64,000 nucleotides of DNA from Ostrea edulis (Eukaryota). The stretch covers positions 82,584,001-82,648,000 of the forward strand of contig NC_079168.1 in assembly GCF_947568905.1 (NCBI RefSeq), given 5' to 3'. Positions 1 through 24,979 of this stretch are shown one piece after another. How positions within the stretch are numbered: the stretch's first letter is position 1; every line of letters starts with the position of its first letter. The notes below the pieces were generated by a model. It searched no databases and was not told where the DNA came from. It worked only from the letters and a program-made list of their open reading frames with translations. Position numbers and translations under genes: made by a program.

Positions 1-12
1 AACAAATCATAC

Positions 13-2130: not shown

Positions 2131-2405
2131 TTTTTAAAACTTGGTTTACAATTTGCAACGTTTCTCGTATATCGCGCGCTCTGGTGATGGCAACTTGACC
2201 GATCAACTGATAAGAGTAGCTGCGAAGGCTGGACGCTGTGAGGGACAACACGGGGATTTTGAAGTAATTCCATACTGGAAGTTATTTCTCACTTAATTGT
2301 ATATTAAAGAACCAATGAATGCAACGCATATATACCATACTATCTGCAACAAACCCCTGTTTTACCCTAAATTAAGCATCATTACATACGTATATTCAAA
2401 GCAAG

Positions 2406-5355
2406 ATGGGCAAGCGAAGAGGACCTTACAAAAAACGAAAAACAGAATTAAATTGCGAGGATTATGAATTTAAAGGGGAAACTATTGATGCATGTTTGCA
2501 TTTGCAACTTCAAGGAGATGTTGCAGACCAAGGAGATATTCAAGGAGATGTGCAGAATCAACAAAGAATTGAAAATGATGGCATTGAAGCCTGTGAATTA
2601 GAACAGGAATGTGCTAATATATCAAGGAATGAGGCTCACCCACAGGTGGATAATCATAATTTTAGTTAGGCAACTGGAGATAATAATGATTTAATAACCA
2701 TAATCGTAATTATGTGTGTTATGACAATATGGTATATGTATGTAATTATAGTAGACATGCTCAAAAATGTAATTGTCATCTTTATAATATTCAATTTTTG
2801 TATGGGTGGTTTAATGAAGTGCAGCATACAATATTTCTTTAACATTTTAGGCAACTGGAGATAATAATGATTTTCCAAGCAAGGAGAATGTGGATGAAGA
2901 ATACGATTTCAAGTATGAGGAGGTACTAAATGTTCTCGCGAAAACAACTGATGATAATGAAGACCAAGTGATTGAAGAAACATTAGATGAAATGAGATGT
3001 GATGATGACCTGCAGTTACATGACAGTATGGAGTATCAATGTTTTCAAGATGATGATTTGGACGTTGAATTGAATGAGGATAATTTTCAAAATGCCTTTG
3101 AAGCTGTTGGAAGTGAAGATGAGGATATGCAGCCCCTCTATCCAGGATCGAGAGTAACTACGGGAGCGTTTATGTTACTCTTATCCCTGTTTACAATGAA
3201 ACACAGTATAGTCGGGGACGGTATTATGCAACTCCTTAATTTAATTTCCTTGGCATTGCCGCAGGGACATAACTTGTGTACCAGCCTGCATTCATATCGG
3301 GCTTTTTTTCGCAAATTGCGTAACCCTATAGTATATCACCATTACTGTCCATTTTGCTTAGGATTTATTGAAAACAAAAACATAAATAAATGTCCGTACA
3401 GTGGATGTGAAAAGTGCCTAATTTTAACTTCCAATACACCGTATTTTTTAGAAATGCCGATTGAAGAACAAATTAAGAACTTTTTTTCTCAGAGAGGTTT
3501 CTACCGTAATTTACAAGGCCGATTTAATCGTAATAGCGATACGTACAAAGACATTTATGATGGAACATTATACAAATCTTATATGGAAAATAATGGAATA
3601 TTGAATTCGCCAAATAATATATCATTTACTTTCAACACTGACGGAGCTCCCGTTTTCAAGAGCTCTAAAGTTGCGATATGGCCTCTGTTTTTAGTTATCA
3701 ATGAGCTACCTTATCACCTTCGAATGATGAAAGAAAACATGATTTTAGCCGGTTTGTGGTTCGGAAATCACAAACCATCGATGGGAACCTTTTTGCATCC
3801 ATTTTTAAATGCTTTTAGGAGACTTAGAAAGGGTATTGAGTGTAACGTACCCTGCATTGGATCTGTGACAAGTAAATCTGTACTATTATGTGGAACAGCT
3901 GATCTGCCAGCTAGATCTTTACTATGCAATTCTGTTCAGTTTAATGGTTCCTTTTCGTGTTGGAAATGCCTGCAGCCAGGAGAAACTGCAGCTAGAGGAA
4001 AGGGCCATTGTCATGTCTTCCCCTACATTCATGAAAATCCTAAAGGACCCGAAAGAACAAAAGAAAGCGTCATTCGCGACGCAAGAGAAGCTATGGAAAA
4101 TTTGGAAAACGGACGGTCTAGATATGCAGTTAATGGAATTAAAGGACCTTCATGGCTTGCATTTTTCCCCGAATTCAATATATCGAAGGGAATAGCCATA
4201 GATTATATGCATGGTGTTCTTTTGGGAGTACAAAAACTACTTTTGCGATTGTGGTTTGCACCTGAATTTAAACAACATAATTTTAGTGTATACAACCATA
4301 TAGAAGAAGCTGACGTACGTTTGAAAAATCTCCATCCTACCTTGGAAATAACAAGAATGCCTAGGACAATTCAAAATGACTTGAAATATTGGAAAGCATC
4401 CGAATTCAGATCTTTCCTCCTCTATTTTGGTCTTCCAGTACTTCACGGAATTTTGGATAAACAAAGATTTCGACATTTTTCCCTACTGTCCAATGCTATT
4501 CACTTGTTTTTATATTGCGGATCGACCGATGCCATGATAAATCAAGGTGAAGAAATGATGTTTGAATTTTGCTCAAAGTTTGAGATATTATATGATGTAT
4601 CTTTTATGACATTGAATTTGCACCAACTTGTTCATCTGGCAGACAGTGTGAGGTGTTTAGGGCCTTTGTATACACACTCGTGTTTTTCATTCGAGGACAA
4701 AAATGGATTCATATTAAAATTGATCAGGGGGACTCAAAGTATTGACAATCAAATTACTACAGGTGTCTCTTTTGTGCAAAAAATTCCAGAATTAAAACAG
4801 AAATGCTTGTCATCAGAACAAAAAGACGTAGACCGATTATGCAAGTCAATTGAATCACCGCATACTTTGAAGAGAGGAATATTAATTTCAGATGATACAT
4901 TTGTATTAGGAGCACTCAAAGACAAAGTGTTATCCAATGAGGAATTCGACTGTCTGTGGGAGTATTTAGGCTATTGCCCTGTTCAAAACCATGTGAAATA
5001 CTTCATTCGCCTTGATGTGAAAGGGAATACTGTGTATGGACTAGATTATGGACGCATGATTAAACGGGACAATTCGACAATAATATCTAGCCAAGACGGG
5101 GAATTATACTTCGGAAAAGTGCGTTTTTTTGTAATATTAGACTTAGACCGGATAGGAGATACTACGCTCGCTTTGACCGAGCGTCTACAGTCTCCACGAT
5201 TTTCGCCAGAAATTAATATCTTGTCTGTTAAAGTAACAAACGAGATAAAGTTTGTCAACATCAAAAACATTCAAGAAGGTTGCATGTATTTATCTGTCGC
5301 TGGCACAAATAGACAATACGTGTGCAGATTTCCAAATAAACTAGAATCAGATTGA
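2406..5355 (+). CDS. EnSpm/CACTA (Tnp2/Transposase_21-like) transposase, two exons (2406-2645, 2851-5355)
   Basis: Motifs FNTDGAPVFKSS, WPLFLVINELP, DLPAR, CWKC, IDYMHGVLLG, WKASEFR, LNLHQLVH, FSFEDKNG; GT-AG phase-0 intron in frame; no stops. Confidence 0.9.
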
Positions 5356-5559
5356 TTATGCATACTAATTGAAAGTACATATTATGTACATGTTATTAAC
5401 ATGTGGACATCCATGGAACTATGGTAAATAAATGGGAATTTTGAAAGACAATTCAAATTGTATGATATGTTTTAATGTATAAAATGTCTAAGTCCCACAT
5501 TTCTGATTCACGATAATTTCGAAGTTCCAAATTCCGGCTCACGAAAATTCTAAGTTATA

Positions 5560-5813
5560 AATTCCGTGTCGCATGAAGATTTCCGTCTGTAAAAATAATC
5601 TAAGTGTTGATTTTACGTGTGAAGATAGATAACGATGCAGTTTACTGTCGGTTTCCGGGCGGAATTTCTTATTTTTCTGGCCGTAAAATTGGGGTAGTTA
5701 CGGGCAGAATTTTATTCCTCCCCAATTACAACCAGAAAATAGGCATTCCTTCTACTTTACTGTCTATTCCCGGGCGAATTACGGGCGGATTACGTCTCAA
5801 AGTTTCGTACGGG
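5560..5813. repeat. Subterminal repeat array and terminal inverted repeat of element 1
   Basis: Clustered ACGGG/CCGT/GGGCG motifs ending in AAAGTTTCGTACGGG. Confidence 0.75.
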
Positions 5814-6004
5814 TAAATTTACCTTTTCATATAACCTACAGTAACAATGTAAAATACTAATACTAATAGGTGTGGAATAAATCAGTAGAGATCATACTTA
5901 ATACAAAATATAGCCTTCTGATGAGGTCAATCCCTAGAAATATATAGACCTTATAGAGAAAGCATATCGACAAAGCACAAAGTGCAAGTTCGATCTATAT
6001 ATAT

Positions 6005-6270
6005 CCCGTACGAAATTATTAGACGGATCCCGTCTGAATTTCAGGCGGAAAGTACATGGAATCCATCTAAGTCCTCCTAACCTTAGGTGGATATTAGACG
6101 GACATAAAATTCCGTCTAAGAAAAGGCGGAATACGCTTCAGCCTTGAGGCGGATTCCGCCTCTTCCTTTAAGCGTATTTCATGATTAAGCAGGAAAAAAA
6201 AAATTAGAAAATTTCAGTCTGGTCACTTAGATGGAATTTGGACTTAGATCTTTCGGTAAGGCGAAATTTT
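6005..6270. repeat. Left TIR and subterminal GGCGGA/GACGGA array of element 2
   Basis: Many AGGCGGA, AGACGGA, CCGTCT and CCGCCT motifs in both orientations. Confidence 0.85.
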
Positions 6271-6741
6271 GAACTTAGTCAATTTTTGTTGATTCTCAAA
6301 TCTTCACAAATTTAAAAAACTGACCTTTGCTGATATTAACAAAGCATACCCTGGTATTCAATGAACATGCTTATTAAACCTCAAGTTATATGACCAAAGT
6401 TGTTAAGTACCACGTAAATTGTAAAAAATAAAAACAAGATTTATCTGATTATTTCTTGGAATTTTTTTTATTATTTTTGGAATGTTGTTTTCCACTAACA
6501 TTATCAGAATGCTATAAGGCCAAGGGGCATCAGTCTATGTACATTTATTCAACAGAAGAAGAAAGAATCACTGCTTGCAATCATTTTAGGAATATGCAAG
6601 AATAAGTTTATAATGTCTAATGCATCATTAACACACAGAATAAAACCATCAGTGAGAAAAATAATGCTATAACAAGCATATAATTTAAACATCATCTTAT
6701 GTAATGCATGCACTCTGATCTACACATAGTTCTGGACCATT

Positions 6742-9700
6742 TTAGTCAGACTCTAACCTGTTTGGAAACTTACACATGAATGAGGTCTGCCCTCCAGGAA
6801 AAGAAACAAGCAAACAGCTTGACAATATATCATTTATATTTACAACTTCAACATCATTTGTTTTAATAACTGATAACATATTTGAATTTTCATTGTAATT
6901 TCTGCATAGCAACTTCTTTATGAATACAAGAGGTTTTGTTATACCTGCAGTGTTGTCTTCCAACAAAATAAAAAAGATAACTTCTCCAAAGCTAATCCCA
7001 CTCATTCCATTGTAACAAATTGCTGAATTGTTCCTTTTGATCATTCTGGAATATTCAGTGCCATAAATTATATATGATTCATATTCTACTCTGTTAAAAC
7101 TTCTAAATGTATCACACACATGATCATATTTCAAGAAATTTTGGAGTGCAGCAGTCTCAACATTGGTCAATACTCTACTGTACGGGGCACCTAGAATGTA
7201 TATCCCACTCCCTAGTTTCTGACCCCTCTTAAGCAAAGATGGCTCTTCAATAGTTTTGCATAATTCATCAACTTCCGAATTTTCTAAGACACATTTCTGT
7301 TTTAATTCAGGTAGCTTTTGGATAAATGATATAGCAGTTATTATCTGAGTATCAATACTCTGACTTCCTCGGATCATTTTCAAAACAATCCCATTTTTAC
7401 TTTCAAAAGAAAAGCAGCTGTGGGTATAGAGAGGGCCAAGATCCCTTACACAATCTGGTAAATGAAGCAGTTGATGGACATTTAGTCTTAAAAAACATCT
7501 GTCATATAACTCTTCTAAACACCTACAAAACTCAAACAAAAGCATTTCAGCTCTATCTAAATCTTTTTCATTTGACCCAAATTTCAGAAGTATGTGCATA
7601 GAGTCCACCAACAAAAGAAAGTGAAAAAATCGCTGCATGTCTAAAATTCCATGCAGAACTGGAGCACCAAAAAATAATAAAAAAGATCTATATTCTGATG
7701 CTTTCCAATATTTCAAGTCTTTTTCTATAGATCGTGGTAATCTAGAAATATCAAGAGTAGGTCTAATACTCTGAAGCCTGGTATCTACTTCACAAACACT
7801 GTCATAAATATTATATGCTTTCCCTTTGTGCTTCTCACTAAACCATAATTCTAACAACATCTTTTGCACCCCTAATAGGACACCATGCATGTAGTCAATG
7901 GCAATGCCAGATACAATGTTAAAATGGGGCACGAAGAAAAGCCATGATGGTCCCTTTATACCTTTTACTGGCTTTCCCATTACAACCTGTTGGTCTTGTA
8001 CTGCTGTCCTTGCATTTTCCAACACATTTTCCTTTGTTCGTACTGGTCCTTTGGGTTCTTCACTTTGAAACGGAAAAATCCTTGCATGGCCTCGCCCAAC
8101 AGATGCTGTCTCTCCTTCTTGCTCACATTTCCAACAGGAGAATGCTCCATTGTATTGTACGTGGTTACAAAGTAAACTTCTGGCTGGGAGATCAGCTGTT
8201 CCACATAATAAGAGACCTCTACACAGAAATTGGCCTCTTTCAGGTGATATACATTTGATTCCTTCATTCATCTTCTGTAGCGATTTTAAAAATGGTTTTA
8301 AAAATGTCCCCATTGATGGTTTTTTGTTTCCATACCACAGGCTTGCCAATATCATGTTCTCTTTCTGCATCCGCTGCTTATATGGTAATTCGTTAATAAC
8401 AAGATAAATCGGCCAAATAGATGTCTTGCTGCTTTTAAAAACAGGAGCTCCATCAGTATTGAAAGTAAATGATATGTTTTCTTGAAAACTTAAAATTCCG
8501 TGATTTTCACTTAATTGTTTGTACAGCTTCCCATCATAAATATCTTCATAGGTGTTATCACTGGATTTCCTTTTGAATCTATGTCCTAAACTCTCATAAA
8601 ATCCTTTCTGAGCGAATAAATTTTTTATTTGATGTTCTAATGGCATTTCAATGAAATAAGAGGCATTTCTAACACTAAATTGAGCTTTACAAAATTCATA
8701 AGGACAGCTTTGCACTGTGGTGTTATCTATATATCCAACACAGTGATTACAGTAGTAGTGGCGAACAAGTGGATTCCTCAGATTCTTGAAAAATAACTTA
8801 AATTCATATAATGACGTACAAAGTTTATGACCATGTGGAAGGGCTAAGGCCAGAATCTTTAGAAGTTGTTCTGTTGCCTCTCCAATCAGATTATACTTCG
8901 TAGTAAATATGGCAAGCAACAGCATAAATGCACCTAATGTCACTGCAGCACCAGGATAGAGTGGATCTGAATCGACATCATTATCTTCTGCATCCCGATC
9001 TGTCGAGTGCTCTACCTCAGTTGGAATGTAAAGATCTGCTAATGAATCAAACTGTAAATCAAAATCTTCCTCAGCCAAAGTTTGTTCATCTTCCGTCAAA
9101 TCTTTAAAGGATTCCGGCTCCGAATTGCAGTTGGTAATTAGTTCTTGTTCGTACGTTTGCACAAAGTTAAATTGGACTTTGTTTGTTTCCACAGAAGCTT
9201 CCTCCAGTGTTTGTGATGAAACCGAATCTTGATCTTGGTCAACCAAAGTCTGAAATTAAAAATAACTCGGTGAAAAAAAAAAAACTCACGAAATTTGGTT
9301 CTGAAACCTGTGAAGCGACGTTCCGTTCCTTAATTCCGAGAAAATTCGAATTGGGGCTATATGCTAGGTTTCTGAATTAACTATACGCGTAAAAAATAAT
9401 TTAATCATTATAACACGATCATTTCACAAATTACCTAAAGTATATCCAGGAAAAAAAACAAAACATTTGCAGTTGTAATGGCATACGCATGGCATTGTTG
9501 ATATTTATTCCATTGCATGTACAGATTTAAAAAAACCGGATGTTTCGATCAATTTCATTCATTAACCAATTCGCTCGGGGACGCATTCGGAATATTACAC
9601 AGACCCACAATTTTCAACAAACTAGATGAATTAATACATCAAGTATTTAAGCTTTAATTTACGTTTTGAGATATTTTCATTAAGATTTTATTGATTAAAA

Positions 9701-10069
9701 AATATTTTTAAATTGCATACAGAATTCTTTAAAAAAAAAGGGGGGGGGGGAATGAAAACGGGGGGGGGGGGGGGGGGGGGGTATTATTCATACCTCCTCG
9801 ATTTGGCTTTCATCCCGAGACTTGGGAACAGGCTGCTCACCACAGACAGAGGATTTTTCAGGCAAAGGAAAATCAATTTGGTTCATGTCCGAAAATTCGG
9901 TAGTATCGGTATCCAATTTCATTACCGTCTCGCTCATCAGCTCAGAATCCGATAAATCTTCATTCCCTTGAAAAGGCTCAAAACTGCAGCTTTGCTCTTG
10001 TAAAACGAACTTCTTGTATGGGCCTCGTTTCCCTTTTGCTTTGCGCTTTCCAGTTTTTTCAACGTCCAT
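6742..10069 (-). CDS. EnSpm/CACTA transposase, two exons (10069-9794, 9249-6742)
   Basis: Same motif series as element 1 (FNTDGAPVFKSS, DLPAR, IDYMH, WKASEYR, FSFESKNG); N-terminal KRGPYKK and C-terminal FPNRLESD also shared; in-frame GT-AG intron. Confidence 0.9.
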
Positions 10070-10582
10070 TTTTCAGTTGTCTTCAACTGTTCTCTATCAG
10101 TACTATTTTCAATATACATGTAACTGAGTAACTCAATACCAGGCAAAGATTCTGAGTTGGCCGATTAAGGCAACCAAGGGGTGTTATTGTGCTTACGATT
10201 TTTTTACGGGATACCCTTTTTAAAAATACTATCATGCTTTATATATTTTTTAAAAAGTGTGTGTGAGTATGTCATATGTATTGAAATTACAAATTGTTGA
10301 TATAATTCCGTATTTACGTTTATTATCATGATTAATTGTGATACTTGTGACATAATCAGAACGTTCAAGTTTGCTTGCGCTGCATTTATAACCCCTGGGG
10401 TGCCCTTAGCCTGGTTCTCTGAAATCTGATCATGATGCCATGTGATGCTGACCACTGCTGACCACCAACTGTTTACGCGCTTGATAAATCTTTGTTCACA
10501 AAAAGCCACGGTAGACATTTTGATAACACGAAAGTTCGCTACACTCTTGATCACTTTGCCTTTATTAAACTTAATTCTAAAG

Positions 10583-13500
10583 ATGTTCGGATGTGTTTTC
10601 TTCCACGAGGATAAAAGTTTGAGCGTTGTTGGAGAGAAGTCTAAACGGCTGGAGCTCTTGGGATCTTTTCAGGAGAGAGAAAAAGTTAACATGAAGTGGG
10701 GAAAAGACATTTTCTCGGGAGTTATTGTCCATGTGCATGGTAAGACTATCTACTTCTAATTAAAATGTTTTATCTTCTTTATTGCTAACATTCCAATATG
10801 ATTACTTGTATTAACATGATTAAACTCTTTAAAAAATTCTGGGAGATGGTCGGAATATGCCAGTAATTAAAAAATGAATATTTTTCTGACAATTTTAAGC
10901 ATAATGTTACACGTAATCGTTTGTATGTACAGAATCAGTATGATATTGATATTCAACTTCAGTAAACCTATTTTTACGCTCATGAACAAATTTAGTTAAT
11001 TTTGATTTTAAAAAATGTTGTTCGGAACATTCTCCATTGTTGGCTATGAAAACGCCAGTCATTCCGATAGCAGAAAGCGCGCATTGCCGATTACAGTCCT
11101 TGGTGGAACTCTTTTGTGTAGGAAACTTGATAAGCCTTGTGTACATTACCGTTGTTGTCATCATGCATACACTTGGATATATATATTAATTAGTATGGAT
11201 ATTTACGTTCATCAAGCCGTTGTGATTTTCTTCGGCACACAAATGTAGGCAAATTATTTTATAATTTTTACTATTTTAAGTTTTAAGTGACTTTAAAGGA
11301 AAAGGAAATCTTAAGCACTTTGCTTAGTTAGTTTAATAAACCTTTACGTTTTTAATACCGGGTAACACGAGTTATATCTTTTATAGAGAATCAAGATCTA
11401 CTTGATGCAGAGACTGTAAAGGCAGAGAAGAAAGTTCTGAGAGGGAAGAACTTGAGCTCTGAAGACAGTGTCGAACTACTTATCGCGCATTTCAAAAAAG
11501 CTGAGAATGAAAACCAGTCTGAGAAAAGAGACAGGAAACGGGAAAGGAATCAAACGGAAAGGGCCAAAGAAAGCCAAGAACAAGACAAAGAAATGAGCCC
11601 TAAAAAGAAGAGAAAAAATGTGGAAAATGAAGACAAAGATAATCAAATCGAAGGGAAAGATGAGGGAAGGAAAAACAACAATGAAGAAAAGAAAAACAAT
11701 GCAAATGATGAAGCAAAGAAAAACAAAAACAAGCCTGATAAAAAGAACAAAGTAGAAGAAAAGAGTAAGAAGAAAACCATGGAAGTTGCAACACCAAAAA
11801 TTAAAGAGAAACAGGAAAAGAAGGCTGAGAGTAGTGTACAGCTGCTAACTTCAAAAGAGATGCTTTCATCATCATCTTTGTGTGAACAGTTTGGGTTAGC
11901 AGCTGCAACACAAAATATTGACAATAGCAAGGATGACTTAACTCTGACATCAACCTGGGCCCTCTGCAACCCAGAGCTGGAAAGGTCATCTGTGATGTCA
12001 GCAACAGGTAATTATACAGAGAAATGTTGTACACACCCACATTGACATAGAACGAAATAGTTTTTGATATATTTCCTTGTTGAATAGTTCCATCTTTTTG
12101 TGCCATTCTATGTTTTTAATATATTTCCTTGTCGAATAGTTCCATCTTATGATGCCATCCAACCACCAAATGATGTAATTGAGGTATTTAGATTACTACT
12201 GAAACCACAAATACAACGCTACATGAGAAGTGTGATCACCCAGTTCCATGAGACCACATCCCAGGTAAAGCACTGTATTTTTAATCAATTTACAAAGCCA
12301 TTTTAATTAAAACTCTATCTTCTTGTGGTTTTGGAATTAATTCATAATTTTTCCCTTAGATTGACAATACAATGACTGATACATGCATACCCACATATAC
12401 AACAATGTCACCTGCCACATGGACACAAGACTCCAATTATACGCAACCAGCTCCCTGGACTCCACAAATTACAGAGCCATCGCTTCATCAGCAGATGCCA
12501 ACACTGCAGATTTCCCCTCCACATTCAACACATTACATGCCACCTCGACAGATGCCACCTCAGATGCCACCACAGATCTCACCTCAGATTACACTGAAAC
12601 AGATTCAACCGCAAATCACACTGGAACAGATGCCACCACAAATTTCACTGGAACAAAGTCCAATGCAACACATGCTTCCAAATCATGCAATTCCATCCCA
12701 ACATGTGACACCACAAAAGATGAATACCGCACCACAACAGATGCCATCAAACCATGTAGACAGCCCAATTACACCAAGGAGGTCACCTAGGAAGCATGTA
12801 TCTACTCCAGAGCTTTCTGATGGACAGGTAAGCGATGGTTACTATACCAGCAACTTTTAATTCTTAATAATATTTATCTTTATTTTAATAACTATATATA
12901 TATAACATATATAAGAAATATTGAAATGAAACTTGCATATGCAGAAGAAATACATAGTCATCTAATGTACTGTTTTGAAGAACTCTTTTTTCCTTGTTCA
13001 TCGATATTTATTGCAGAGATAAATCTCCTAAATTAATTTTCTGTATTACTTCTAGATGACGAGGCTCCTGTCAAACCATCCCTTGACAGTTAGGAGGGAT
13101 GCACTGAGGAAAGCAAAAAGTGCAGCAAAAAAGGTTCATTCCTCAAAGATGGCCTTCACTTTGACTGCAAAACTCCTTCCTGCAGTTTTTTCATGTGAGG
13201 AGTTGGCCCTCAGTAGAGGACAAGGTCTAAAATCAAAAGATGGAGACAAAAGACCTGTTCTTGATGTCACAAAGATGACAGTTTTAAAAGGTATTAAAAT
13301 AAGTGCTGGTGTCACTGTGTCATGGTAACAGCAATTCTACTAAAGTGAAAGCAGAAAGATTTCGGAAGAAATATCTTAATACCAGATAAATTAATAGTTG
13401 ATTGAGTTACACAAATATTTCAGAGCAAAGTGATACTAAATAATGATATATGATATAAATTCTTCTTTTTCAGAATACGTAGCAGTGTGGTGCGAGAAGA

Positions 13501-13601
13501 ATGGTGGAAAACATGGGGAGAAGGAGGTCAATGATGCAGTAACGGAGCAGATTTCGTATGCCAGAAAAAAATTAAAGGGGAAGAAAAAACAAGACAGTTA
13601 A
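10583..13601 (+). CDS. Six-exon 577-aa accessory protein with C-terminal BEN-like domain
   Basis: Exons 10583-10739, 11387-12007, 12140-12264, 12360-12827, 13056-13290, 13474-13601; all GT-AG, phase-compatible, 1734 nt with no internal stop. The C-terminus (LTAKLLPAVFSCEELA...RPVLDVTKMTVLKEYV...VNDAVTEQISYARKK) fits the BEN pattern. Confidence 0.8.
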
Positions 13602-13849
13602 GACAGACAAGTCGATAGCTGAGTGGCTTCAAATTTGTAAATTTGAGTGATTATGAAGTTATTATTTGATTGTTAGTTGTACAACCTCCTTATCTGAAAA
13701 CCTCTATATTTAAATTGTATTAAATTCAAGACTTAATTTTATTAAATTAATTTTTTTTAATTAAATGTAATTGTTTCATAGCAACAATGAGTTTACTTGT
13801 CTATATCCTTGTTATATTGAAAGACGGATTCATTTGCATATTCCGCTTA

Positions 13850-14107
13850 ATGTACGCCTAAGCTTTATGCCATATTCCGTCTAAAATTTAGCAGGATTTT
13901 TAAGCGGAATCTTTAAGCGGAATCTTTAGGCGGGCTAATTTACATATTTCGCCTAAATTTCCGCTTAAATTCCAGCTGGACTCCATCTAATGTCCACTTG
14001 TATTTCGCCTAAGTTAACTATTCATAGTAATGCTGACTTCAGGCAAAATACGCCTTAGTTGTCCGCCTGAAATCCGCCTTTTCTCCGCCTGGAATATTTC
14101 GTACGGG
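13850..14107. repeat. Right subterminal array and TIR of element 2
   Basis: Repeated TTCCGCT, AAGCGGA, AGGCGGG and TCCGCCT motifs ending TTTCGTACGGG. Confidence 0.85.
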
Positions 14108-14550
14108 ATGCTTTCTCTAAGGTCCATATACATGTATCTAAGGATTGTGCCGAATCAAAAGGCTATAGTATATCTAGTCAATTTTTTATATCAGTTATTG
14201 AACAATAGCTTTAAAATACGTTTTGAACACTAAATAGTTTCTCGTACGAGACTTTGTTACGTCATACTATATTAATGACGTTTATAGCAGCTGAAGTATT
14301 GGTTTTATAGAAACATCCATTTTATGTTGATCATTGTAACGCCATTACTGTTGTTGTTGCATAGAGAATTGTTTTCAATTTTAGAAACACCAGGTTTATA
14401 AGCTTTTTTAGAAGCTTAAAAGTGAAATACCAAGATTTTATGAAGTTTTATTCTTGAACATGTGATCAAGTTTGAGCCAACCAGGTAACTCACCAGGGAA
14501 TAATAGTGGGAAAAAAAATAAACCCCTTTATGAACAGCACAAAAACTTAC

Positions 14551-15123
14551 TGTTGGCTGGATTTAATGTCCTGTAGAATAACTTTAGATATGCTCATCAT
14601 TGAAGCATGCTCAGAGGCTCCAAGGTAGTTGGAGTAGACTTCACTATTACGGAATTTGAAAGGAACTCCTACAATAATTAATCATACCACAATAAGGATT
14701 TTTTTTTCTTTTTAGAAAAATAAATCTGGTCAAATTGATTGTACATGTACAATGTCATATTTAGCTATACATGTATATATGTATGTTGGTGTTGGAACTT
14801 TATACAGTTTAAGCAAAAAAAAAATGAACAGCTATTAAATTTAGATACATGTACCTGCTAGTTGCATTTGTGCACAATGCATTGGCAGCCATCTCCTACT
14901 GATATTTGTAGATGTGTCATCAATGAACAAATTCACAGGAATTGACAGTTTCGGAATGCGTTGATTCTGATACGAATTCAGAACCTCAGACTTCTCCTAA
15001 AATAAAAACTATTAGGGTTACTTAGTTGCTTTCATTAAACACAGTCTTTTTCTATACATTGTGTATATAAAACACAGTAAGAATAACAAAAAAAAAAATT
15101 TGTTTAATAGTGAAAATTTCCTC

Positions 15124-15158
<35 letters not shown>

Positions 15159-17242
15159 TCACCTTGGCTCATATTTAAAGATTTTTCCTATTCGTATGTA
15201 AAACTTTGATCCCCTATTGTCGCCTCATCTTACTCCAAGGGGTCATGATTTTAACAAACTTGAATCTGCACTATGTCAGAAAGCTTTCATGTAAGTTTGG
15301 TTATAATTGGCCCAGTGGTTATGGAGAAGAAGTCGAAAATGTAAAAAGTTTACAAACGGACGGACAGACAGACGACGGATAACAGGTGATCAGGAAAGCT
15401 CACCTGAGCTTTCAGCTCAGGTGAGCTAAAAACTGCAAATGGACCTTGTCTAAAAATTATAATCATGAATTGTAAATGGAATCATGATTTACATTTCACT
15501 TGAATGGTTTACAAAACCTTATGCCCAAGATCAAATTCCTTCTGACTACACTATTACACTGTACCTCATCTGATATTTCGACCAGTTTTCCTGATGTTGC
15601 CATTTCCATAATTTTTATGTGATCTGCTGAGTATGCAGACAAACTAGATAATGGAGCAGCACTGCATTTTGTTGTCTTCACCAAGCAGCTGTTGAAAGAA
15701 ATCGACAAAAAATTATGGTTATGGTTATATGAACATAGATGTACTACAAATAGATGGGATACCAAAATACATTTTACCTATGAAGCTTGCATTTATATCA
15801 AACAAAATGACCATTAGCCTAGACTGTCATCTAAGTATTAATCATGTCAATTTTTCAGGCAATGACAACTTTGTTCACACCTTAACTGGAACACTGGTTT
15901 CACATGAATATTTTACGGTTGATGAGGACTCTAAAATCATGATCATATTCATGCATTTTGGCCTCAACAGAAGTTTATAGACTTAATGTCCAAATTTAGT
16001 TAAGAATCATATGTAAGGAAACTCATATGTAAATCATATGAGACATGTATGTGTACTTTAATTATGTAATATGCAGATGCTGGAAATCAAGTATTTCTAT
16101 TCATTCTACGACAGTCGCGATGGCCTAGAGGTTAGAGCGTTCGCCTGCATGCGGAAGATCAGGGCTTGAATCCGAGATACAATCAACCAATCAATAGTTA
16201 AGCCAATATACACATTTCAAATTACAAGGGCATGAATTGGACACTACATTGTACCTTTGATTGTCTTCATTCCTTTCCTGTTTCAATATTTCTAAATCAG
16301 CCAGAATAAAATTTTCCTACAAGAGTAAAAATATGCAAAATAATAAAGTATATGCTGTATTCAGTAAAACTCTGATATAGCGAATTTCTGCAGACACTCT
16401 CTAAAAATTCGCTTTAAGCGTAATTTGCTATACGTTTATACCGAATTCATAATTAAAATATAACGAATTCGTTATAAAACTGATTTGTTCTACATGTATA
16501 TCAGTTGCATAAGAAAACCTAATCTAAAAAATAAGCGAATTTTAACAATGTACCTCTTCACTCTCGTAAAATGATCTTATGATTCCAATAATATGGTCAG
16601 CTGTTGATTCCACAACATTACCCACATGAAAATGAGTATCACCAAATGTTGCCCAAGGGGATACGATTTCATGGAGGCGACTGCCGTCCCTTTGCTCACG
16701 TACAAGACCAGTTTTCCGTGGATACCTTAATGAGAATAATTTAGGGTTAAATTACAATTAAGTCAAACCTCCTTATCTTGAACTCAATCGGACCAAAATT
16801 AAACTTAGGAATATGCGAGGATTCAAGAAAACAAGGTAAAAAAAACATAACAGAAAAAGCGGTTGGTTTGCCAGTTCACGTTGACACATGCATCCCTGAT
16901 ATCAGTTAGTGTTTGAGATAACAAAGATCTGCATCAATTGTATATTACTGAAGTTCATAAAGTGGTGTGGCCTGTGACAGTTAAATAGACCTCAGTTATT
17001 CATGAACCACTTTCACTACATTTGGTTATACTATGGTTTTACCTTTTCATTCTCATTATAAATAAGTGTTCATATTTATACATACCTGGCAATGTTCTTT
17101 GATATTGAAGGATTGCTCAAGTGGAGTTTGGCAATTTCAGTTGGTTTCAGAATGTATAAAGGTAAACCATTGTCATCTTCTCCCTGATATTACAATAAAT
17201 CTGATACAACTTTTTGGCAATGTAAATAAAATATCAGTATTA

Positions 17243-17280
<38 letters not shown>

Positions 17281-17710
17281 TCACCTTGGCCCATATCTGA
17301 AGACTTTCCATATATACCTTGGTCCCTATTATGGCCCAAACTACCCTTTGCAAACTTGAATCTACACTATGTCAGAAAACTTTCATGTAAATGTCAACTT
17401 CTTTGGCCCAATGGTTCTTTTAAAGCTTTTTTCTATATTTGTATGCAAAACTTTCACCCCCCCCCCCACTTGTGGCCCCATCCTACCCCCTGGGGACCAT
17501 GATTTGAACAAACTTGAATCTGCATTATGTCAGGAAGCTTTCAGGTAAATTTCAGCTCTTCTGGCCCAGTGGTTCTTGAGAAGAAGATTTTTAAATGACC
17601 CCACCCTATTTTTGCATTTTTGTGATTATCTCCCCTTTGAAAGGGACATGGTCCTTCATTTGAACAAACTTGAAAGCCCTTCACCCAAGGATGCTTTTGG
17701 CCAAGTTAGT

Positions 17711-17742
<32 letters not shown>

Positions 17743-19854
17743 TCGAAAATGTGAAAAGTTTACAGACAGACGGACAAGACAGACAGACGGACAGACAGAC
17801 AGACGGACGCCGGACAAAATGTGATCAGAATAGCTCACTTGAACCTTCGGTTCAGGTGAGCTAAAAAATTGAAATGTTAAGTTAAGGGTTGGAAATATGG
17901 TTATATTTCCTGACACCTTTCCTATGTAGGAAATATTGGGTAGATAAAAGGTTTTTTTTTCAACATTGAAATACTGTGTAATATATCAGTTGAATAAAAT
18001 CAATAGATATATATTTCATAATGAGAAAAAAAACAACCAAATGTTTTATACTCATAAACATTTTTTATAACTGCAATCTGTAAAAAAAAAAATCTGAATC
18101 TGTCCTCAGCTACTCTTAAAATAAATTCCATATCCAACAACAAAACACTGATTGGATCACCATGACTCCAAGTGTGATGAGTATGCATTTCAAGGGTAGA
18201 TCCATGGGGGTGGGTGGAGGGGGAGGGGTCCAGACATCCGCTAAAGGGGGTCTTTAGCGGACCAAAAAATTAATTTATTCAATTTCAACGAGACTTTTAG
18301 TAAAAATGATATGAAAGGTGGATACTTATATGCAATTACATTATTCAAATTTATCAACACCATGTAGTATATCAGGATAAATGGGACGAAACACTGATAC
18401 ATGTGTATATATTTACGATATTTTATTTTCGTCAGATACAAGTATCATTTAAAAATTCTTAAAAAGTATATGTAATATAATTTTTTTTACCGCAGAGCTT
18501 CTGGGGGCCTATGCAGCCCCCCCCCCCCCCCTCCACCTAATTGCAAGTAACCTTTAAACCAGCTCTTTTTTATCATTGAAAATCGGATGTGAATATGTCC
18601 ATAACAATGACTAGAATTTGGGAAACAGTAAATTTAATGTTAATATGTGCACAATCAAAAGGCGTAAATAGGGTGGGGGTGGAGATTGTGAAACACCTAA
18701 AAGATCAAGTGCTAGACCCCCCTCCCCCTTCACAAATTTCTGGGTCCGCCTTTGCATTTTTACTCATACCAAATGAATGATGAATCTTACCTTAGCTATC
18801 AAGCTGTTTACATCCAAGTCCCCAAATTTCATGTTTCTGATATGATTTAACGATGGTACATTGGGAACACCAACTTCTTTTAAAATGAACCACACATACT
18901 TTGCCACTTCCAAACTCTTTTAAAGAAAACAAAATGGAATTGACAGGAATGACATTTTTCAGATACTGTGGTTATACATTATTTTTACTGTTCAAAAACA
19001 AGTAGAGTTGGGGAATATCACTGATGCAAATTTCAGTATCAATATAAGAATTACTGACTTGGTCATGTATCAAAGCACATTACTAAAACAAATATTTAAT
19101 TAATTCAAATGTCATATATTCATACCTCCCACACACACAAAAAAAATGCATTTTCAGAATTGATGATTAGGGAAATATTTGTGATCAGTTGTTCTAAACA
19201 AAGTATAATTCGATTCGATCTGTTTGTAATGAATGTGAAAATTCTAGTTTGTTTGTTTTTTTTAAATTTGGATTTTAATATAATTTACACATTTTACTTA
19301 CAATGTGATGTGTTGTACTATGAAGCAATCCATATAAAAGAAGACTCAGCTTGTCTGGAAATGGATACCACTTGCTATCATTTGTTTGGTCCTCGTATGT
19401 TTGGCTCTCAGAGTCACTACTGAAGCCTTCATTCTAAAAACAAAGTGTCAATATTTTCCTATCCTTTGTAAACATGAAACTAAACGGTCTAAAATTTACA
19501 CTCAACAACTTCTTGTAAATTAATAAAATTTCTAAATAATGATACAGAATATTCAAAGTACAATACCAATAGATCATAATCCTCTGTCTCCGAGACGGGT
19601 TCAGTCTCCCCATCGGTATCCGAATCGTCATCGTTAATCAACGTTGCGAAACTGTTTTCTAAAATTTCTGCGTCTCGTTGAAAAGAACACGAACTAAACT
19701 TCGTCGTATTGTCGAGATTTTCCTCCTTGTCACAACAGGTGTTCATCAGGCTTTTGAAGCTGTCATTTAATAGGTGTTTTCTTGTAAGATTGTGTCGATT
19801 TAAATGATTTATTTTGTCAAATGACACATCACAGACGTTGCAGCGAAAAGCCAT
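14551..19854 (-). CDS. Nine-exon C2H2-finger + DDE-like (CACTA-related) transposase, C-terminal part not in view
   Basis: Exons 19854-19567, 19433-19302, 18916-18791, 17183-17086, 16725-16554, 16316-16255, 15688-15565, 14996-14855, 14668-14551; all GT-AG and in frame (1262 nt, no stop). Motifs: CNVC..HNLTRKH, WYPFPDK, VPSL, SNP..RYP, LFIDDTSTNISRRW..LAGVP. Confidence 0.75.
15124..15432. mobile_element. Non-autonomous Helentron-associated element (HINE/DINE-1-like)
   Basis: AACAAGAGGCCCATGGGCC hairpin plus GCTCACCTGAG at one end; GACAGACG microsatellite; AGCTCACCTGAGC-TTTCA-GCTCAGGTGAGCT hairpin at the other end. Confidence 0.8.
16113..16185 (+). mobile_element. tRNA-derived SINE head fragment
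   Basis: A-box-like TGGCCTAGAGGTTAGAGCG and degenerate B-box-like GGCTTGAATCC; no complete cloverleaf. Confidence 0.55.
17245..17867. mobile_element. HINE-like element with internal satellite-like monomers
   Basis: Same two terminal hairpins as 15124-15432; repeated AACAAACTTGAA monomers; its first ~270 bp closely match 58622-58921. Confidence 0.8.
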
Positions 19855-19997
19855 CGCGCCAACTGTCAGTGTCAAAATCAATGTTCAGAAAACGCTTTCA
19901 CACTGTTTGCATTACTTGCCATCGGTTCAAGCGCGAAGTTAACCAAGCATATTTTAGCACGCGCTAGCAGACGATCAAAACATAAAGGTTCGCAAAG

Positions 19998-22900
19998 ATG
20001 GAGAGAGACTACTTGGCAGTAAGTATCGCTAAATTTGTTTATATTCAATACACTGACCCATATCTATGAATAAAATGTTTAGATTTTAATGCAATACAAG
20101 TATCTATGCGTGTTTACTCAATGTCTAAGGGCAGTAACTCGAACAAAGATGAGGAGTGGATCTAAGAACTGTCTGATATTTTGGTTTTATCATAAACAAA
20201 CAGGAATCATAAATAAACAATTCATTAACTTTTAATTGACATTCAGTCATTAAGGTGCATATGGTATTTATTCACAGGACTCTCAAGATGACCTATTCGA
20301 AAACTCAGAAGTGGGGCCTCTCCCAAATCTCTCAGATTCTCCACAATTAGCTCGAGTAGTTCCTGAATCACCCCCTGCTCCTCCCACTGTTGACATCCCT
20401 CCACAGGATAAAATTATGGCAGTGTTGTCAGAAATTTGTAAGGAACTTAATTTCTTTCTTTTTTTAATTATTGTAATGATTAACTTATTCATAAGTATCA
20501 ATTTATTCAAAAGTAATATATTATTTTTCAGTAAAAATTGTTTATGTATAAATATTAATGTTTTCTGGGGGGAATAAATAAATAAATAAGTGATTATAAT
20601 ATAATTGATGCTTGTTTGTTTGATACATATTTCTCCTAGAATTAGAATTGAAAGCACAGTTTGACCAAAATCAAAACCTTCATAAATAAGGAATATATTT
20701 AATGTTCTTTTAAGTGAAAGAACAGAAAAAGCTGACAGAGGAGGTTAACAAATTGAGAGGAGAGGTCCAAAGGATTAAGAACAAAGAAGCACTCTCAATG
20801 ACCAAAGTGTCAGTAGAAGGGTCAACTATTGAGGTATGGTGTATTATCATTTGTAATGAAAGTCATATAAGATTAACAGTTAATATGATCCATTTTATAT
20901 TCTAACAGAAAGTGAATTAAATTAATTAAAACCTATGATGAAAACTATTAATTTTAGTAAAAGCATTTATGAATCATTTATTTACAAAAGCCAATAACAT
21001 TTTACTTACCTTATGCTAGTATAAATGCAGGCCAGTAATATATTTATAGCTCACCTGAACTGAAACCTCAAGTGAGCTTTTCTGATCAACCGTCCGTCCA
21101 TCTGTCTAGCTTTCATGGCCCCTGGGGGTCGTATATGGGGTCACAATAGGAGATCAAAGTTTTATATTGAAATATATTGCAATTTTTTTTTAAAAGCTTC
21201 TTTTCAAGATCCACTGGACCAGAAAAGATGAAACTCAGATATGCAAGCTCTCTGAAGTAATTACGTAGTTTGAAAATTGTTCAAATCATGGTCCCTGGGG
21301 GTTGTATGGGGCCACATTAGGGACTTGTGATTTTTTACATCAAAATATATAGGAAAAAAACTTTATAAATCTTCAAATCAAGAACACTGATCCAGAACAG
21401 ATGAAAGTCTTATGTGAAAAATTCTTGACATAGTGTAGCTAATTGTAAATTGATCAAATCATGGCCCCCGGAGGTAGGGTGCGGCCACAATAGGCAATTT
21501 AATTTTTAATTAGCAAAATACAGGGAGAATGTTTAAAACTTCTCTCCTCAAGAGCTGCAAAGCCATGAAAACTTATATTTATGTGAAAGCCTCCACAGCT
21601 GGCATAAATTCAATGAAGTTTGTTGAAATCTTGAACCCCAACGACAGGGTGGGGCCACAATAGATGATAAGAGTTTGACAATGGAATTTATTGGAAAGGG
21701 TTTTGAAAGCTAATTCTCAAGAATAGCAAAGCCATCATTTATCATATTTACATGGAAGCATTAATTGTCAGGAAGTGTAGATTCAATTGTGTTCAAATTA
21801 TGGCCCAGTGGGTTTTAAGGTGGTGCCACAAAATGCAACAGTAAGCATTGTGGTTCATGGGCCTCTTATTTAAAGCCATCATATACCCGTTTTATTTTAT
21901 ATATGCTGTGAATTAATGAATTAATTGTATTTTCACAGAAGGAGTATATAAATTTCCTAAAAGCCAAATTCAGCGTATTTCTGTGGATCAATTTCCAAGA
22001 TCAAGAAATACAGGTTTGTTAGTTGATATATTCTGATGAACAGTGAAAATTGTTAACTGGTTAAATACTTCAAAAGAGGTGCAAAAGTGTTCACCTTGCT
22101 AACAAAATTAAGAATGAGTACCTTAAATTGGGACATATTGTTTTTATTTCAAAAGTGAAAAGTACATTTTTTGCTGTAAGAGGCAACATTTCCAATTTCA
22201 ATTATCAGTTCACCTGAGCCAAAGAGCTTTTCTGTTCGAAGGGTGTCTGGCATCCATCTGTCTGTTTGTCTGTTCGTCTGTAAACTTTTCACATTTTTCA
22301 CTTCTTTTCAAGAACCACTGACCCATTTTTAACCAAACTTGCCAACAAGCATCCTTGTGTGAAGTGGATTTCAGTTTCTTCAAATGAAGGACCATGCACC
22401 CTCTTCCAAGGGTTGATTTTTGTTGAATTAAAGAAAATTGAATTGCATTTTTCATAACATCTACTCAAGAACCACCGGACCAGAAAAGATCAAACTTCTG
22501 TAAAAGCTTCAATACATTAGTGTAGATTCAAGTTGTTTAAATCATGATTCCCGGGGCTAAGGCAGGGTCACAATAGGCAAATAAAGTTTTATATAGGAAT
22601 ATAACGGAAAAATCTTTACAACTCTTCTTCTCAAGAAGTGCAAAGCCAAGATCATAGTGGTCATGTAACGTGTTCAAACATTTAATTTATACCTTTGATG
22701 TTTAAATAAATAAATCATTTAAGTATTATTTCACACTGAAACATTATTCGGATGTAAATGTGTGTTGATAAATGATGTAATCTATCATAATGCCCTTTAT
22801 GGGATTTTGATGATGTGACCAACTCATATTTTTACATCCCAATAAAAGTTTTGAAATGATACCTTATTTCGCAATAAAATACTTCTAAGAACTGCATGCA

Positions 22901-24279: not shown

Positions 24280-24734
24280 CTTTTTAAATTAAGATTTTAT
24301 AAATTCAAGTTATTGTTTATTGTATATTTGTGTATTTCTTCTTTAAAATCATGTGCAGTTATTGATTTACTTGTTACTTTTAAATATGATATGTTTTTAT
24401 ATGTGTATCAAAGGAACTGAAATTTAGCACAAAATATAAGTATCGACAAGTGCTAATCTTGCTTTGTCTTCTTTTCGGTGAAAATTTCACTTTTTATAAA
24501 TGTGAATCTTTCATTCTGATTTCAAAAGTTATGTAAATATGCACTGTCAAATCTTTTATTTCTGTTCATCGTTGAAGCCGTTCCATATTTATAAGATTGA
24601 GATATTTTAGAGAATATTGAGTAATAATTTTTTTGTACTTTGCATTGGTATTTAATCAAGAAATAGTTGTAGAATGAATAGAAATACTTGATTTCCAGCA
24701 TCTGCATATTACATATTAAAGTACACATACATGT

Positions 24735-24979
24735 CTCATATGATTTACATATGAGTTTCCTTACATATGATTCTCATATAACATATTAGCACAGCATGCA
24801 CACAAAACCTTCATATGTGAATCATATGAAGTCCCTTTCATATGATATACATATGTGAATCATATGTAAATCATATGAAACACATCATATGATTCACATA
24901 TGATGCCCTTTTTTTATGATTCTCATGTGAAGCTAATCATATGATCCACATATGAAAATCATATGTGGATCATATGTGG
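24735..24979. repeat. Dense CATATG palindrome array (presumed subterminal repeats of element 3)
   Basis: More than a dozen CATATG hexamers in ~245 bp, ending CATATGTGG. Confidence 0.85.

What the first reader, a model, noticed from the sequence alone, without database searches (positions are those of the whole stretch)
10583..13601. Intact CACTA element whose second gene is a BEN-like-domain protein: a candidate animal counterpart of TnpA
Seen: a complete element (TIR, AT TSD, intact transposase) carries a divergent 6-exon 577-aa gene with a conserved ~55-aa N-terminal domain, low-complexity linkers and a BEN-like C-terminus. Both ends carry arrays of CpG-containing (A/G)GGCGGA/GACGGA motifs. 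Known: plant Spm TnpA binds subterminal repeats and affects element methylation, and some BEN domains (e.g. BANP) bind CpG motifs in a methylation-sensitive way. Inference: this protein reads the subterminal array and may regulate transposition or silencing.
Basis: partly seen in the sequence, partly recalled or inferred. Interest (0 to 1): 0.75.

Follow-up and report, generated by a model that had tools for sequence, protein, structure and literature searches.

The report
Oyster jumping gene with BEN helper
This is an intact, very recently mobile cut-and-paste transposon of the flat oyster that carries, next to its transposase, a second expressed gene for a BEN-type DNA-binding protein; the pairing is conserved in several bivalves, but what the helper protein binds has not been tested.

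Summary
Window 6005-14107 is an 8.1-kb CACTA-superfamily (animal "TRC"/CMC type) DNA transposon of Ostrea edulis. It has 12-bp perfect inverted ends starting CCC and a 2-bp AT duplication, proven by an empty-site contig. Its transposase reading frame is intact (Transposase_21).

The divergent six-exon gene at 10583-13601 is real. All five introns appear as GT..AG joints in public contigs. The 577 aa equal the last 577 aa of RefSeq XP_056022461.1.

Its C-terminus is a true but divergent BEN domain:
- Pfam BEN is the only hit, just under threshold.
- The family profile hits the NACC1 BEN domain at E 3e-9.
- A confident model of a 73%-identical relative matches only BEN structures.

AGRCGGA motifs are confined to both subterminal regions.

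Four O. edulis copies are 99.8% identical. The transposase/BEN gene pair lies inside CCYGTAYGAA ends in Saccostrea, Pinctada, Mytilus, one unnamed assembly and a second Ostrea family, and the two gene trees agree.

The idea that the BEN protein reads the subterminal repeats as a TnpA analogue is plausible but untested. Repeat motifs differ between lineages, and methylation sensing has no support.

The scan already noted this family on other DNA of this genome (s1-271401, s1-287653).

The parts
6003..6004 (.). Left copy of the 2-bp target-site duplication (AT)
   Evidence: Same AT at 14108-14109. The empty-site contig in run X5 carries a single AT.
6005..6016 (+). Left terminal inverted repeat, CCCGTACGAAAT
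   Evidence: Perfect 12-bp match to the reverse complement of 14096-14107. The same CCYGTAYGAA ends flank the gene pair in L001, L002, L003 and L007, and a single such right end is seen in L005.
6017..6161 (+). Left subterminal array of AGRCGGA motifs (7 copies, 5 pointing inward)
   Evidence: AGGCGG/GGCGGA hexamers occur 7-8 times in the terminal 350 bp of both ends and 0 times inside.
6742..9249 (-). Transposase exon 2 (835 codons plus stop), with the Transposase_21 domain and a Cys-rich N-terminal motif
   Evidence: Open frame. Pfam PF02992 E 3e-13. 49-57% identical to the transposases of L001-L003, L005 and L007.
9250..9793 (-). Predicted transposase intron (GT..AG) containing long poly-G tracts
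   Evidence: Sequence reading. Not confirmed by any joint. This is the most variable part among the four copies.
9794..10069 (-). Transposase exon 1 (92 codons from ATG 10069)
   Evidence: 100% identical in L006.
10070..10582 (.). Region between the two divergent start codons, presumably a bidirectional promoter; it holds the alternative in-frame ATG at 10445
   Evidence: A contig of X9 runs 10217-10739 into exon 1. RefSeq starts the protein at 10445.
10583..10739 (+). Gene 2 exon 1: conserved N-terminal beta domain (aa 1-52)
   Evidence: Joint 10739|11387 in X9. AlphaFold2 gives four strands at pLDDT 66.6, with weak Tudor/SH3-like matches at Z 5.
11387..12007 (+). Gene 2 exon 2: Lys/Glu/Asn-rich linker with a KKKRK stretch
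   Evidence: Joints on both sides in X9. Two RNA-run contigs (X1) lie here.
12140..12264 (+). Gene 2 exon 3: short conserved helical motif (aa 262-300)
   Evidence: The motif recurs in P0006, P0019, P0022 and P0035. Joints in X9.
12360..12827 (+). Gene 2 exon 4: Pro/Gln/Thr-rich low-complexity region ending in the conserved RRSPRK
   Evidence: Joints in X9.
13056..13290 (+). Gene 2 exon 5: basic linker and the first two thirds of the BEN domain (BEN from about 13149)
   Evidence: 50 relatives found. Pfam BEN on P0055 covers residues 539-597. Joints in X9.
13474..13601 (+). Gene 2 exon 6: last BEN helix (the DNA-recognition helix in solved BEN structures), basic tail and stop
   Evidence: Alignment to NACC1 helix alpha5 read with PMC11472053.
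13822..14095 (-). Right subterminal array of AGRCGGA and related GCGGA motifs (5 exact AGRCGGA copies, three in tandem next to the end)
14096..14107 (-). Right terminal inverted repeat
   Evidence: Contigs of three runs diverge exactly after 14106/14107.
14108..14109 (.). Right copy of the AT duplication
   Evidence: empty site. A second copy (L008) has GA on both sides.

Best explanation
Window 6005-14107 is one copy of a young, probably still active two-gene DNA transposon of the CACTA/Mirage/Chapaev superfamily in Ostrea edulis.

Shown:
- The element has intact ends, a 2-bp duplication, an occupied and an empty allele, and at least four copies that are 99.8% identical.
- The second gene is transcribed and spliced as predicted.
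- It encodes a protein with a small N-terminal beta domain, a basic linker, a short helical motif, a Pro/Gln-rich spacer and a C-terminal BEN domain.
- This gene has travelled with the transposase gene through the diversification of the element family in bivalves.

Inferred:
- The BEN protein is an element-encoded, sequence-specific DNA-binding accessory factor.
- The most likely mechanism is that its BEN recognition helix binds repeated sites in the element's own DNA, the subterminal CpG-containing arrays being the obvious candidates.
- The rest of the protein would then help bring the two ends and the transposase together or bring the transposase into the nucleus. Plant Spm TnpA and the Myb-like protein of PIF/Harbinger elements do this with unrelated folds.
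- A secondary regulatory role (repression or protection from silencing) is possible.
For: Element anatomy and mobility. Transposase family.

Splicing and identity with RefSeq.

BEN identity:
- Pfam BEN is the sole hit on the window's own protein (E 7.5e-4). It is a hit in 14 of 16 relatives scanned, and the best or only one in 13.
- The family profile hits NACC1 BEN structures at E 3e-9, and all 8 hits are BEN domains.
- The AlphaFold2 model has pLDDT 91.5. The top 18 Foldseek hits are all BEN structures; the best eight have TM 0.56-0.77.

DNA-binding surface: seven NACC1 DNA-contact residues were mapped (R429, D462, T465, N466, R468, R469, R472). The window protein has R, E, S, Y, R, K, K at these positions.

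Linkage: a head-to-head Transposase_21 homologue lies upstream in all six full-length loci from five genera or assemblies. Both genes lie inside shared CCYGTAYGAA ends in five of the six. The transposase and BEN-protein trees of six elements have identical topology, a chance of about 1 in 105.

Subterminal arrays are strongly confined to the ends here and in the relatives.
Against: - There are no binding data.
- The enriched subterminal motif changes between lineages: AGRCGGA here, CAGGCGGA in L001, ATACGG in L002 and GGGCGTCA in L003. The recognition helices of L001 and L003 are nearly identical. The arrays might therefore be read by the transposase's own Cys-rich N-terminal region.
- The motifs are absent from the internal promoter region, so Spm-style autoregulation through them is unlikely.
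- The closest solved BEN domain binds CATG, not a CpG site.
- The Pfam score is below the gathering cut-off.
- The library type of the run that shows the joints is not on record.
Confidence: 0.55

Rival explanations
1. The BEN protein is mainly a transcriptional or chromatin regulator of the element, or of host genes. It would act as a repressor that limits transposase expression, or as an anti-silencing factor. It would take no part in the cutting and joining complex.
For: Characterised BEN proteins (Insv, BEND3, BEND6, BANP, NACC1) act as transcriptional regulators on chromatin (PMC11472053 and PMC8887127, seen). The N-terminal domain gives weak Tudor-like matches. The two genes share a short divergent promoter region.
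Against: The AGRCGGA motifs lie at the ends and not in the promoter region. Strict co-inheritance with the transposase and identical tree topology fit a factor needed for mobility at least as well. The Tudor-like match is weak (Z 5, model pLDDT 66.6).
Confidence: 0.22
2. The subterminal arrays are read by the transposase itself. The BEN protein binds host DNA or chromatin and steers integration as a tethering or target-choice factor.
For: The transposase has a Cys-rich motif before the catalytic domain (weak zinc-finger hit at residues 155-187). The motif changes between lineages without matching changes in the BEN helix. Three of the four copies lie inside annotated host genes.
Against: No target preference is visible beyond a 2-bp duplication (AT, GA and CA). 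Only four insertion sites were examined.
Confidence: 0.12
3. The BEN gene is a captured host gene carried as a passenger, with no function for the element.
For: DNA transposons do pick up host fragments. One locus (L004) holds a partial BEN gene without a transposase.
Against: The same domain order, the same intron position inside the BEN domain and the same head-to-head arrangement persist across elements whose proteins are only 30-50% identical, in oysters, pearl oysters and mussels. The gene trees are congruent. The linkers diverge freely while the two end domains stay conserved. L004 also ends in the family's terminal repeat, so it is a broken element.
Confidence: 0.04

Closest known systems
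Maize En/Spm (CACTA) with TnpD transposase and TnpA accessory protein
   Same: Transposase of the same Pfam family (Transposase_21). Arrays of short subterminal repeats at both ends. A second element-encoded protein that lacks the transposase domain.
   Different: The ends begin CCC, not CACTA, and the duplication is 2 bp, not 3 bp. The second protein comes from a separate, divergently transcribed gene rather than from alternative splicing. It has a BEN domain and no similarity to TnpA (no PF03004 hit). The repeats are not in the promoter.
Animal TRC/CACTA elements such as SmTRC1 of Schistosoma mansoni (PMC1636069)
   Same: CCC-starting inverted ends, a 2-bp duplication and a Transposase_21 transposase. 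That paper also proposed a TnpA-like role for a non-transposase product.
   Different: The SmTRC1 accessory products are splice variants with no recognisable domain and no relatives in other animals. Here the partner is a separate gene with a defined DNA-binding fold, conserved across bivalve orders.
PIF/Harbinger elements with a Myb-like DNA-binding second gene
   Same: A two-gene cut-and-paste transposon in which a separate gene encodes a DNA-binding protein thought or shown to bind the element ends and assist the transposase (established knowledge of the family).
   Different: A different transposase superfamily and a different DNA-binding fold.
NACC1/NACC2 BEN domain (PDB 8yzs, 7bv9)
   Same: Best sequence match (profile E 3e-9) and among the best structural matches. 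Most DNA-contact positions are retained.
   Different: NACC proteins are host BTB-BEN transcription cofactors that bind CATG. This protein has no BTB domain, has a different N-terminal domain and is encoded in a transposon. Three base-reading residues differ conservatively (D to E, T to S, R to K).

Membership tests
CACTA/Mirage/Chapaev (CMC) superfamily of DNA transposons | DDE transposase of the tnp2 type (Pfam Transposase_21, PF02992) | tested here: met
   E 3e-13, 49.9 bits against a cut-off of 28.6. Relatives in the database carry PF02992.
CACTA/Mirage/Chapaev (CMC) superfamily of DNA transposons | Terminal inverted repeats beginning CACTA (plants) or CCC (animal members) | tested here: met
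   The ends are CCCGTACGAAAT, the animal form described in PMC1636069. The literal CACTA form is not present.
CACTA/Mirage/Chapaev (CMC) superfamily of DNA transposons | Short target-site duplication (2-4 bp; 2 bp in animal TRC elements) | tested here: met
   AT here, with the empty site seen. GA in L008 and CA in L003. L001 fits 3 bp better, and L002 shows no match.
CACTA/Mirage/Chapaev (CMC) superfamily of DNA transposons | Subterminal repeat arrays | tested here: met
Plant TnpA protein family | Sequence homology to TnpA (Pfam PF03004 or similar) | tested here: not met
   Pfam scans of P0055 and 15 relatives give only BEN.
Plant TnpA protein family | Binds subterminal repeats and is required for transposition | not testable with these tools
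   Needs binding and transposition assays.
BEN domain (PF10523) | Match to the Pfam model above its gathering score | tested here: inconclusive
   P0055 scores 20.1 bits against 23.2, E 7.5e-4, and BEN is the only hit. 14 of 16 family members give BEN hits of 14.6-23.1 bits in the same region.
BEN domain (PF10523) | Profile-level sequence similarity to proteins with solved BEN structures | tested here: met
   Profile of 17 family members against PDB sequences: NACC1 at E 3.3e-9 over profile positions 3-114, followed by BEND3. All 8 hits are BEN domains.
BEN domain (PF10523) | BEN fold (helical bundle with a C-terminal recognition helix) | tested here: met
   Model of P0006:235-354 (73% identical to the window protein): pLDDT 91.5 and pTM 0.83. 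Foldseek ranks 1-18 are all BEN structures (NACC1, Bsg25A, Insv, BEND6, BANP, BEND3), TM up to 0.77.
BEN domain (PF10523) | Basic and polar DNA-contact residues on the last helix and the alpha3-alpha4 loop | tested here: met
   The alignment read against the contacts listed in PMC11472053. Of seven mapped contacts, 2 are identical, 4 conservative and 1 changed. The minor-groove Arg421 position, not among these seven, is not conserved.

The most novel reading that the evidence does not exclude
BEN-domain accessory genes may be an old, regular component of animal CACTA-superfamily transposons. Such elements, rather than host genes, may have been the vehicle that spread BEN domains among animals and seeded host BEN factors. 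NACC-type BEN domains are the closest solved relatives.

Two hints point this way. Atlas clusters from arthropods and rotifers show the same N-terminal domain together with BEN or DUF4806. The transposase is 51% identical to a coral protein and 44% identical to a hemichordate protein.
Probability: 0.15. Interest if true: 0.8.

Novelty: new variant of a known kind. Interest (0 to 1): 0.6.

Why it matters
Two-gene DNA transposons are known, but in animals the partner proteins of CACTA-type elements have had no recognisable fold. Here the partner is a defined DNA-binding domain with solved relatives. It sits in an element that looks alive: the insertion is polymorphic, the copies are 99.8% identical, and the gene is expressed and correctly spliced. 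That makes the accessory-protein question directly testable.

The finding also offers a possible mobile source for the BEN domain, whose origin in animals and DNA viruses is unexplained. It points as well to a native, probably active cut-and-paste transposon in a farmed bivalve.

None of my eight full-text searches of the held open-access library found a paper that links BEN domains to these transposons. Closed-access work and Repbase notes could not be checked.

Tried and rejected
- Pfam on single exon translations gave nothing, because the BEN domain is split by intron 5.
- Exon 5 alone against PDB sequences gave only spurious weak TAL-effector repeats.
- The window's own C-terminus (P0055:500-623) as a single sequence is not significant against PDB (E about 1, NACC1 among the top 3). 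Only the family profile is significant.
- The word search with exon 5 found just two fragments because of its length window, so the exhaustive search was used.
- The N-terminal domain model is of low confidence (pLDDT 66.6), and its Tudor/SH3-like matches (Z about 5) are below what can be trusted. I treat them as a lead only.
- Selection could not be measured by substitutions. The O. edulis copies differ at only 5 sites in gene 2 exons and 6 in transposase exons, and the cross-genus relatives were judged too divergent for a usable synonymous rate (not computed).
- A 3-bp duplication was considered and rejected for this copy, because the empty site fits 2 bp only.
- An in-frame product from the alternative 5' exon (joint 11244 to 11387) was considered and rejected on reading phase.
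Full report
**What is there**

The finding's coordinates (10583-13601) cover one gene of a larger unit. Reading the surroundings and scanning for inverted repeats places the unit at 6005-14107.
- Both ends carry the same 12 bases in inverted orientation (CCCGTACGAAAT).
- Each end is followed inward by a run of short CpG-containing motifs.
- The two bases outside each end are AT.

Laying public contigs on 9200-14150 gave two independent confirmations of the right-hand boundary. Contigs from three runs leave the element exactly after 14106/14107 into three different flanks, so there are other insertions. One contig of run X5 joins the window's left flank directly to 14108 with only one AT. That is the unoccupied allele. 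The duplication is therefore 2 bp, and the insertion is polymorphic in the sampled animals.

**The transposase**

On the minus strand an open frame runs 9249-6742. It is preceded by a 92-codon exon starting at ATG 10069, with GT..AG signals around a 544-bp intron full of poly-G. The joined product is 927 aa. Pfam gives Transposase_21 at E 3e-13, above the curated cut-off, with weaker DUF1258 and DUF4218 hits and a Cys-rich stretch before the catalytic domain. No joint for this intron was seen, so the intron remains a prediction.

**The second gene**

Six exons with canonical splice signals give 1734 coding bases and 577 aa.
- Every one of the five introns appears as a GT..AG joint in contigs of run X9. 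Allowing for the stated 1-2 base ambiguity, the joints are 10739|11387, 12007|12140, 12264|12360, 12827|13056 and 13290|13474.
- The library type of X9 is not on record. Its spliced contigs, and the unspliced contig of the DNA-like run X5 from the same sample, fit RNA.
- Independently, locus L006 (Ostrea edulis chromosome record OX387708.1) turned out to be the same place as the window. Its annotated protein P0055 (XP_056022461.1, 623 aa) is identical to my model over its last 577 residues.
- RefSeq starts 46 codons upstream, at ATG 10445. The relatives in other species begin at the downstream Met (MF/MY-x-C-[IV]-[FY]-F), so 10583 is the conserved start. Both ATGs lie in the transcript.

**Is the C-terminus a BEN domain?**

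Single exons gave nothing in Pfam, because intron 5 splits the domain.
- An exhaustive search with exon 5 found 50 relatives.
- Of 16 scanned by Pfam, 14 have BEN (PF10523), as the best or only hit in 13, at the same place. Scores are 14.6-23.1 bits against a cut-off of 23.2. The window's own protein scores 20.1 bits, E 7.5e-4.
- A profile of 17 family C-termini (alignment A1) hits the BEN domain of NACC1 in the PDB at E 3.3e-9 over nearly its whole length, followed by BEND3. All eight hits are BEN domains.
- AlphaFold2 on that alignment used as first row the Saccostrea echinata relative P0006, which is 73% identical to the window protein here. It gave pLDDT 91.5 and pTM 0.83.
- Foldseek ranks 1-18 are all BEN structures: NACC1, Bsg25A, Insv, BEND6, BANP and BEND3, with TM up to 0.77.
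- The Atlas look-up agrees.

So the domain is a genuine but divergent BEN domain.

I read the alignment against the contacts described for the NACC1-DNA crystal structure (PMC11472053):

| NACC1 contact residue | Window protein |
|---|---|
| Arg429 | R |
| Asp462 | E |
| Thr465 | S |
| Asn466 | Y |
| Arg468 | R |
| Arg469 | K |
| Arg472 | K |

The minor-groove Arg421 position is not conserved. The recognition surface therefore looks intact, but its specificity cannot be read off.

**Rest of the protein**

Residues 1-52 form a conserved domain. It is 48% identical to the neighbouring element's copy and 40-55% identical to other bivalves. The model shows four strands at low confidence, with weak Tudor/SH3-like matches. 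This is a lead, not a finding.

Three further regions follow before the BEN domain:
- a Lys/Glu-rich linker with a KKKRK stretch;
- a short conserved helical motif encoded by exon 3;
- a Pro/Gln-rich spacer ending in RRSPRK.

**Motif arrays**

AGRCGGA occurs 17 times in the window against 3.6 expected, and none of 100 shuffles reached 17. Twelve copies lie at 6021-6161 and 13822-14090, mostly pointing inward from each end. None lies in the 7.6 kb between. An unbiased hexamer count gives the same picture.

**Does the gene belong to the element?**

Six loci with a full-length relative were examined: the window itself, Saccostrea echinata L001, Pinctada imbricata L002, assembly GCA_041381155.1 L003, Mytilus californianus L005, and a second O. 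edulis family L007.
- All six have a Transposase_21 homologue (49-57% identical) upstream on the opposite strand.
- In five of them both genes lie between CCYGTAYGAA ends.
- The intron inside the BEN domain is at the same position.
- Maximum-likelihood trees of the six transposases and of the six BEN proteins have the same three internal splits. For six taxa that is one topology in 105.
- The trees do not follow host relationships: Pinctada groups with an Ostrea element, and Saccostrea with a Mytilus element. Several old lineages therefore coexist or move between hosts.
- One locus (L004) holds only the 3' half of the gene and one element end, so it is a broken copy.

**Activity**

RefSeq lists five near-identical paralogues of the protein in O. 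edulis. I compared three of those loci with the window.
- The four full elements are 99.75-99.8% identical over 8.1 kb, and the differences are mostly singletons.
- Two of the four have clean 2-bp duplications (AT and GA).
- The other two have a nibbled right end (L009 lacks one base; L010 lacks three bases and has a 14-bp deletion), so they are probably immobile although their genes are intact.

**How it probably works**

Shown: a young two-gene element with a DNA-binding-type partner that co-diverges with the transposase.

Inferred: the partner binds repeated sites in the element and assists assembly or nuclear delivery of the transposase, as TnpA and the Harbinger Myb-like protein do.

There are weak points. 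The enriched subterminal motif differs among lineages: AGRCGGA here, CAGGCGGA in L001, ATACGG in L002 and GGGCGTCA in L003. The recognition helices of L001 and L003 are almost the same. The transposase has its own Cys-rich region. Nothing supports methylation sensing, and the nearest solved BEN domain reads CATG.

**Comparison and novelty**

The element meets the tested criteria of the CACTA superfamily in its animal form: CCC ends and a 2-bp duplication, as in PMC1636069. The partner is not a TnpA homologue.

That 2006 paper already proposed a TnpA-like role for non-transposase products of a schistosome element, but those products have no known fold and no relatives.

Eight full-text searches found no paper that links BEN domains with these transposons. 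One paper notes that DUF4806 is a BEN subtype. I recall the paper it cites for this (Pan et al. 2023) from memory, but I could not read it.

UniRef already names one relative 'BEN domain-containing protein', so the domain call itself is not new. The scan had already flagged the same family elsewhere in this genome.

I rate the finding a new variant of a known kind, of moderate to good interest.

Noticed in passing
window 1-5813: A second, related element lies tail to tail with this one, 191 bp away. Its transposase is on the plus strand at 2890-5355 (71% nucleotide identity, Transposase_21), and its right end at 5813 starts CCCGTACGAAAC. A homologue of gene 2 exon 1 lies at 2130-1951(-) (48% aa identity), and a Pro-rich frame lies at 1131-328(-). 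Its subterminal motif is different (GGGCGRA type). The window start cuts off the rest of its second gene.
   Followed up: partly
window 52106 (minus strand): A solitary element end (CCCGTATGAAATTTTTAGACG...) almost identical to the left end of the 13.7-kb second O. edulis family seen in L007. No partner end was found in the window.
   Followed up: no
window 17768-17807: Three AGACGGA motifs in the same orientation at 16-17 bp spacing, inside the neighbouring finding's region (14551-24979). This may be the subterminal array of another element.
   Followed up: no
window 10710-11244 joined to 11387: A contig of run X9 shows an alternative 5' exon inside intron 1, spliced to the normal exon 2 acceptor. 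The ATG at 11015 would be out of frame with exon 2. It is either non-coding or gives an N-terminally shortened protein from an internal Met.
   Followed up: partly
window 10445: RefSeq starts the protein at this upstream in-frame ATG, adding 46 residues that are absent from the annotated relatives in other species. Several out-of-frame ATGs lie just before it.
   Followed up: partly
window 9722-9792 and 1345-1376: Long poly-G tracts. The first lies inside the predicted transposase intron, and that intron is the most variable part among the four copies. It also breaks short-read contigs.
   Followed up: no
L009 9664 and L010 9648 (O. edulis copies): Two of four near-identical copies have lost 1 and 3 bases of the right end (L010 also has a 14-bp deletion nearby). 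Both genes remain intact, but these copies are probably unable to move.
   Followed up: yes
P0134, P0171: The transposase core is 51% identical to a protein of the coral Montipora capricornis (143 cluster members) and 44% identical to one of the hemichordate Glandiceps talaboti. That is about as close as lineages within bivalves, which suggests a very wide or horizontally spread family.
   Followed up: partly
(Atlas clusters): Predicted structures from arthropod and rotifer protein clusters match both the N-terminal domain and a C-terminal BEN or DUF4806 domain. The same two-domain architecture may therefore exist well outside molluscs.
   Followed up: no
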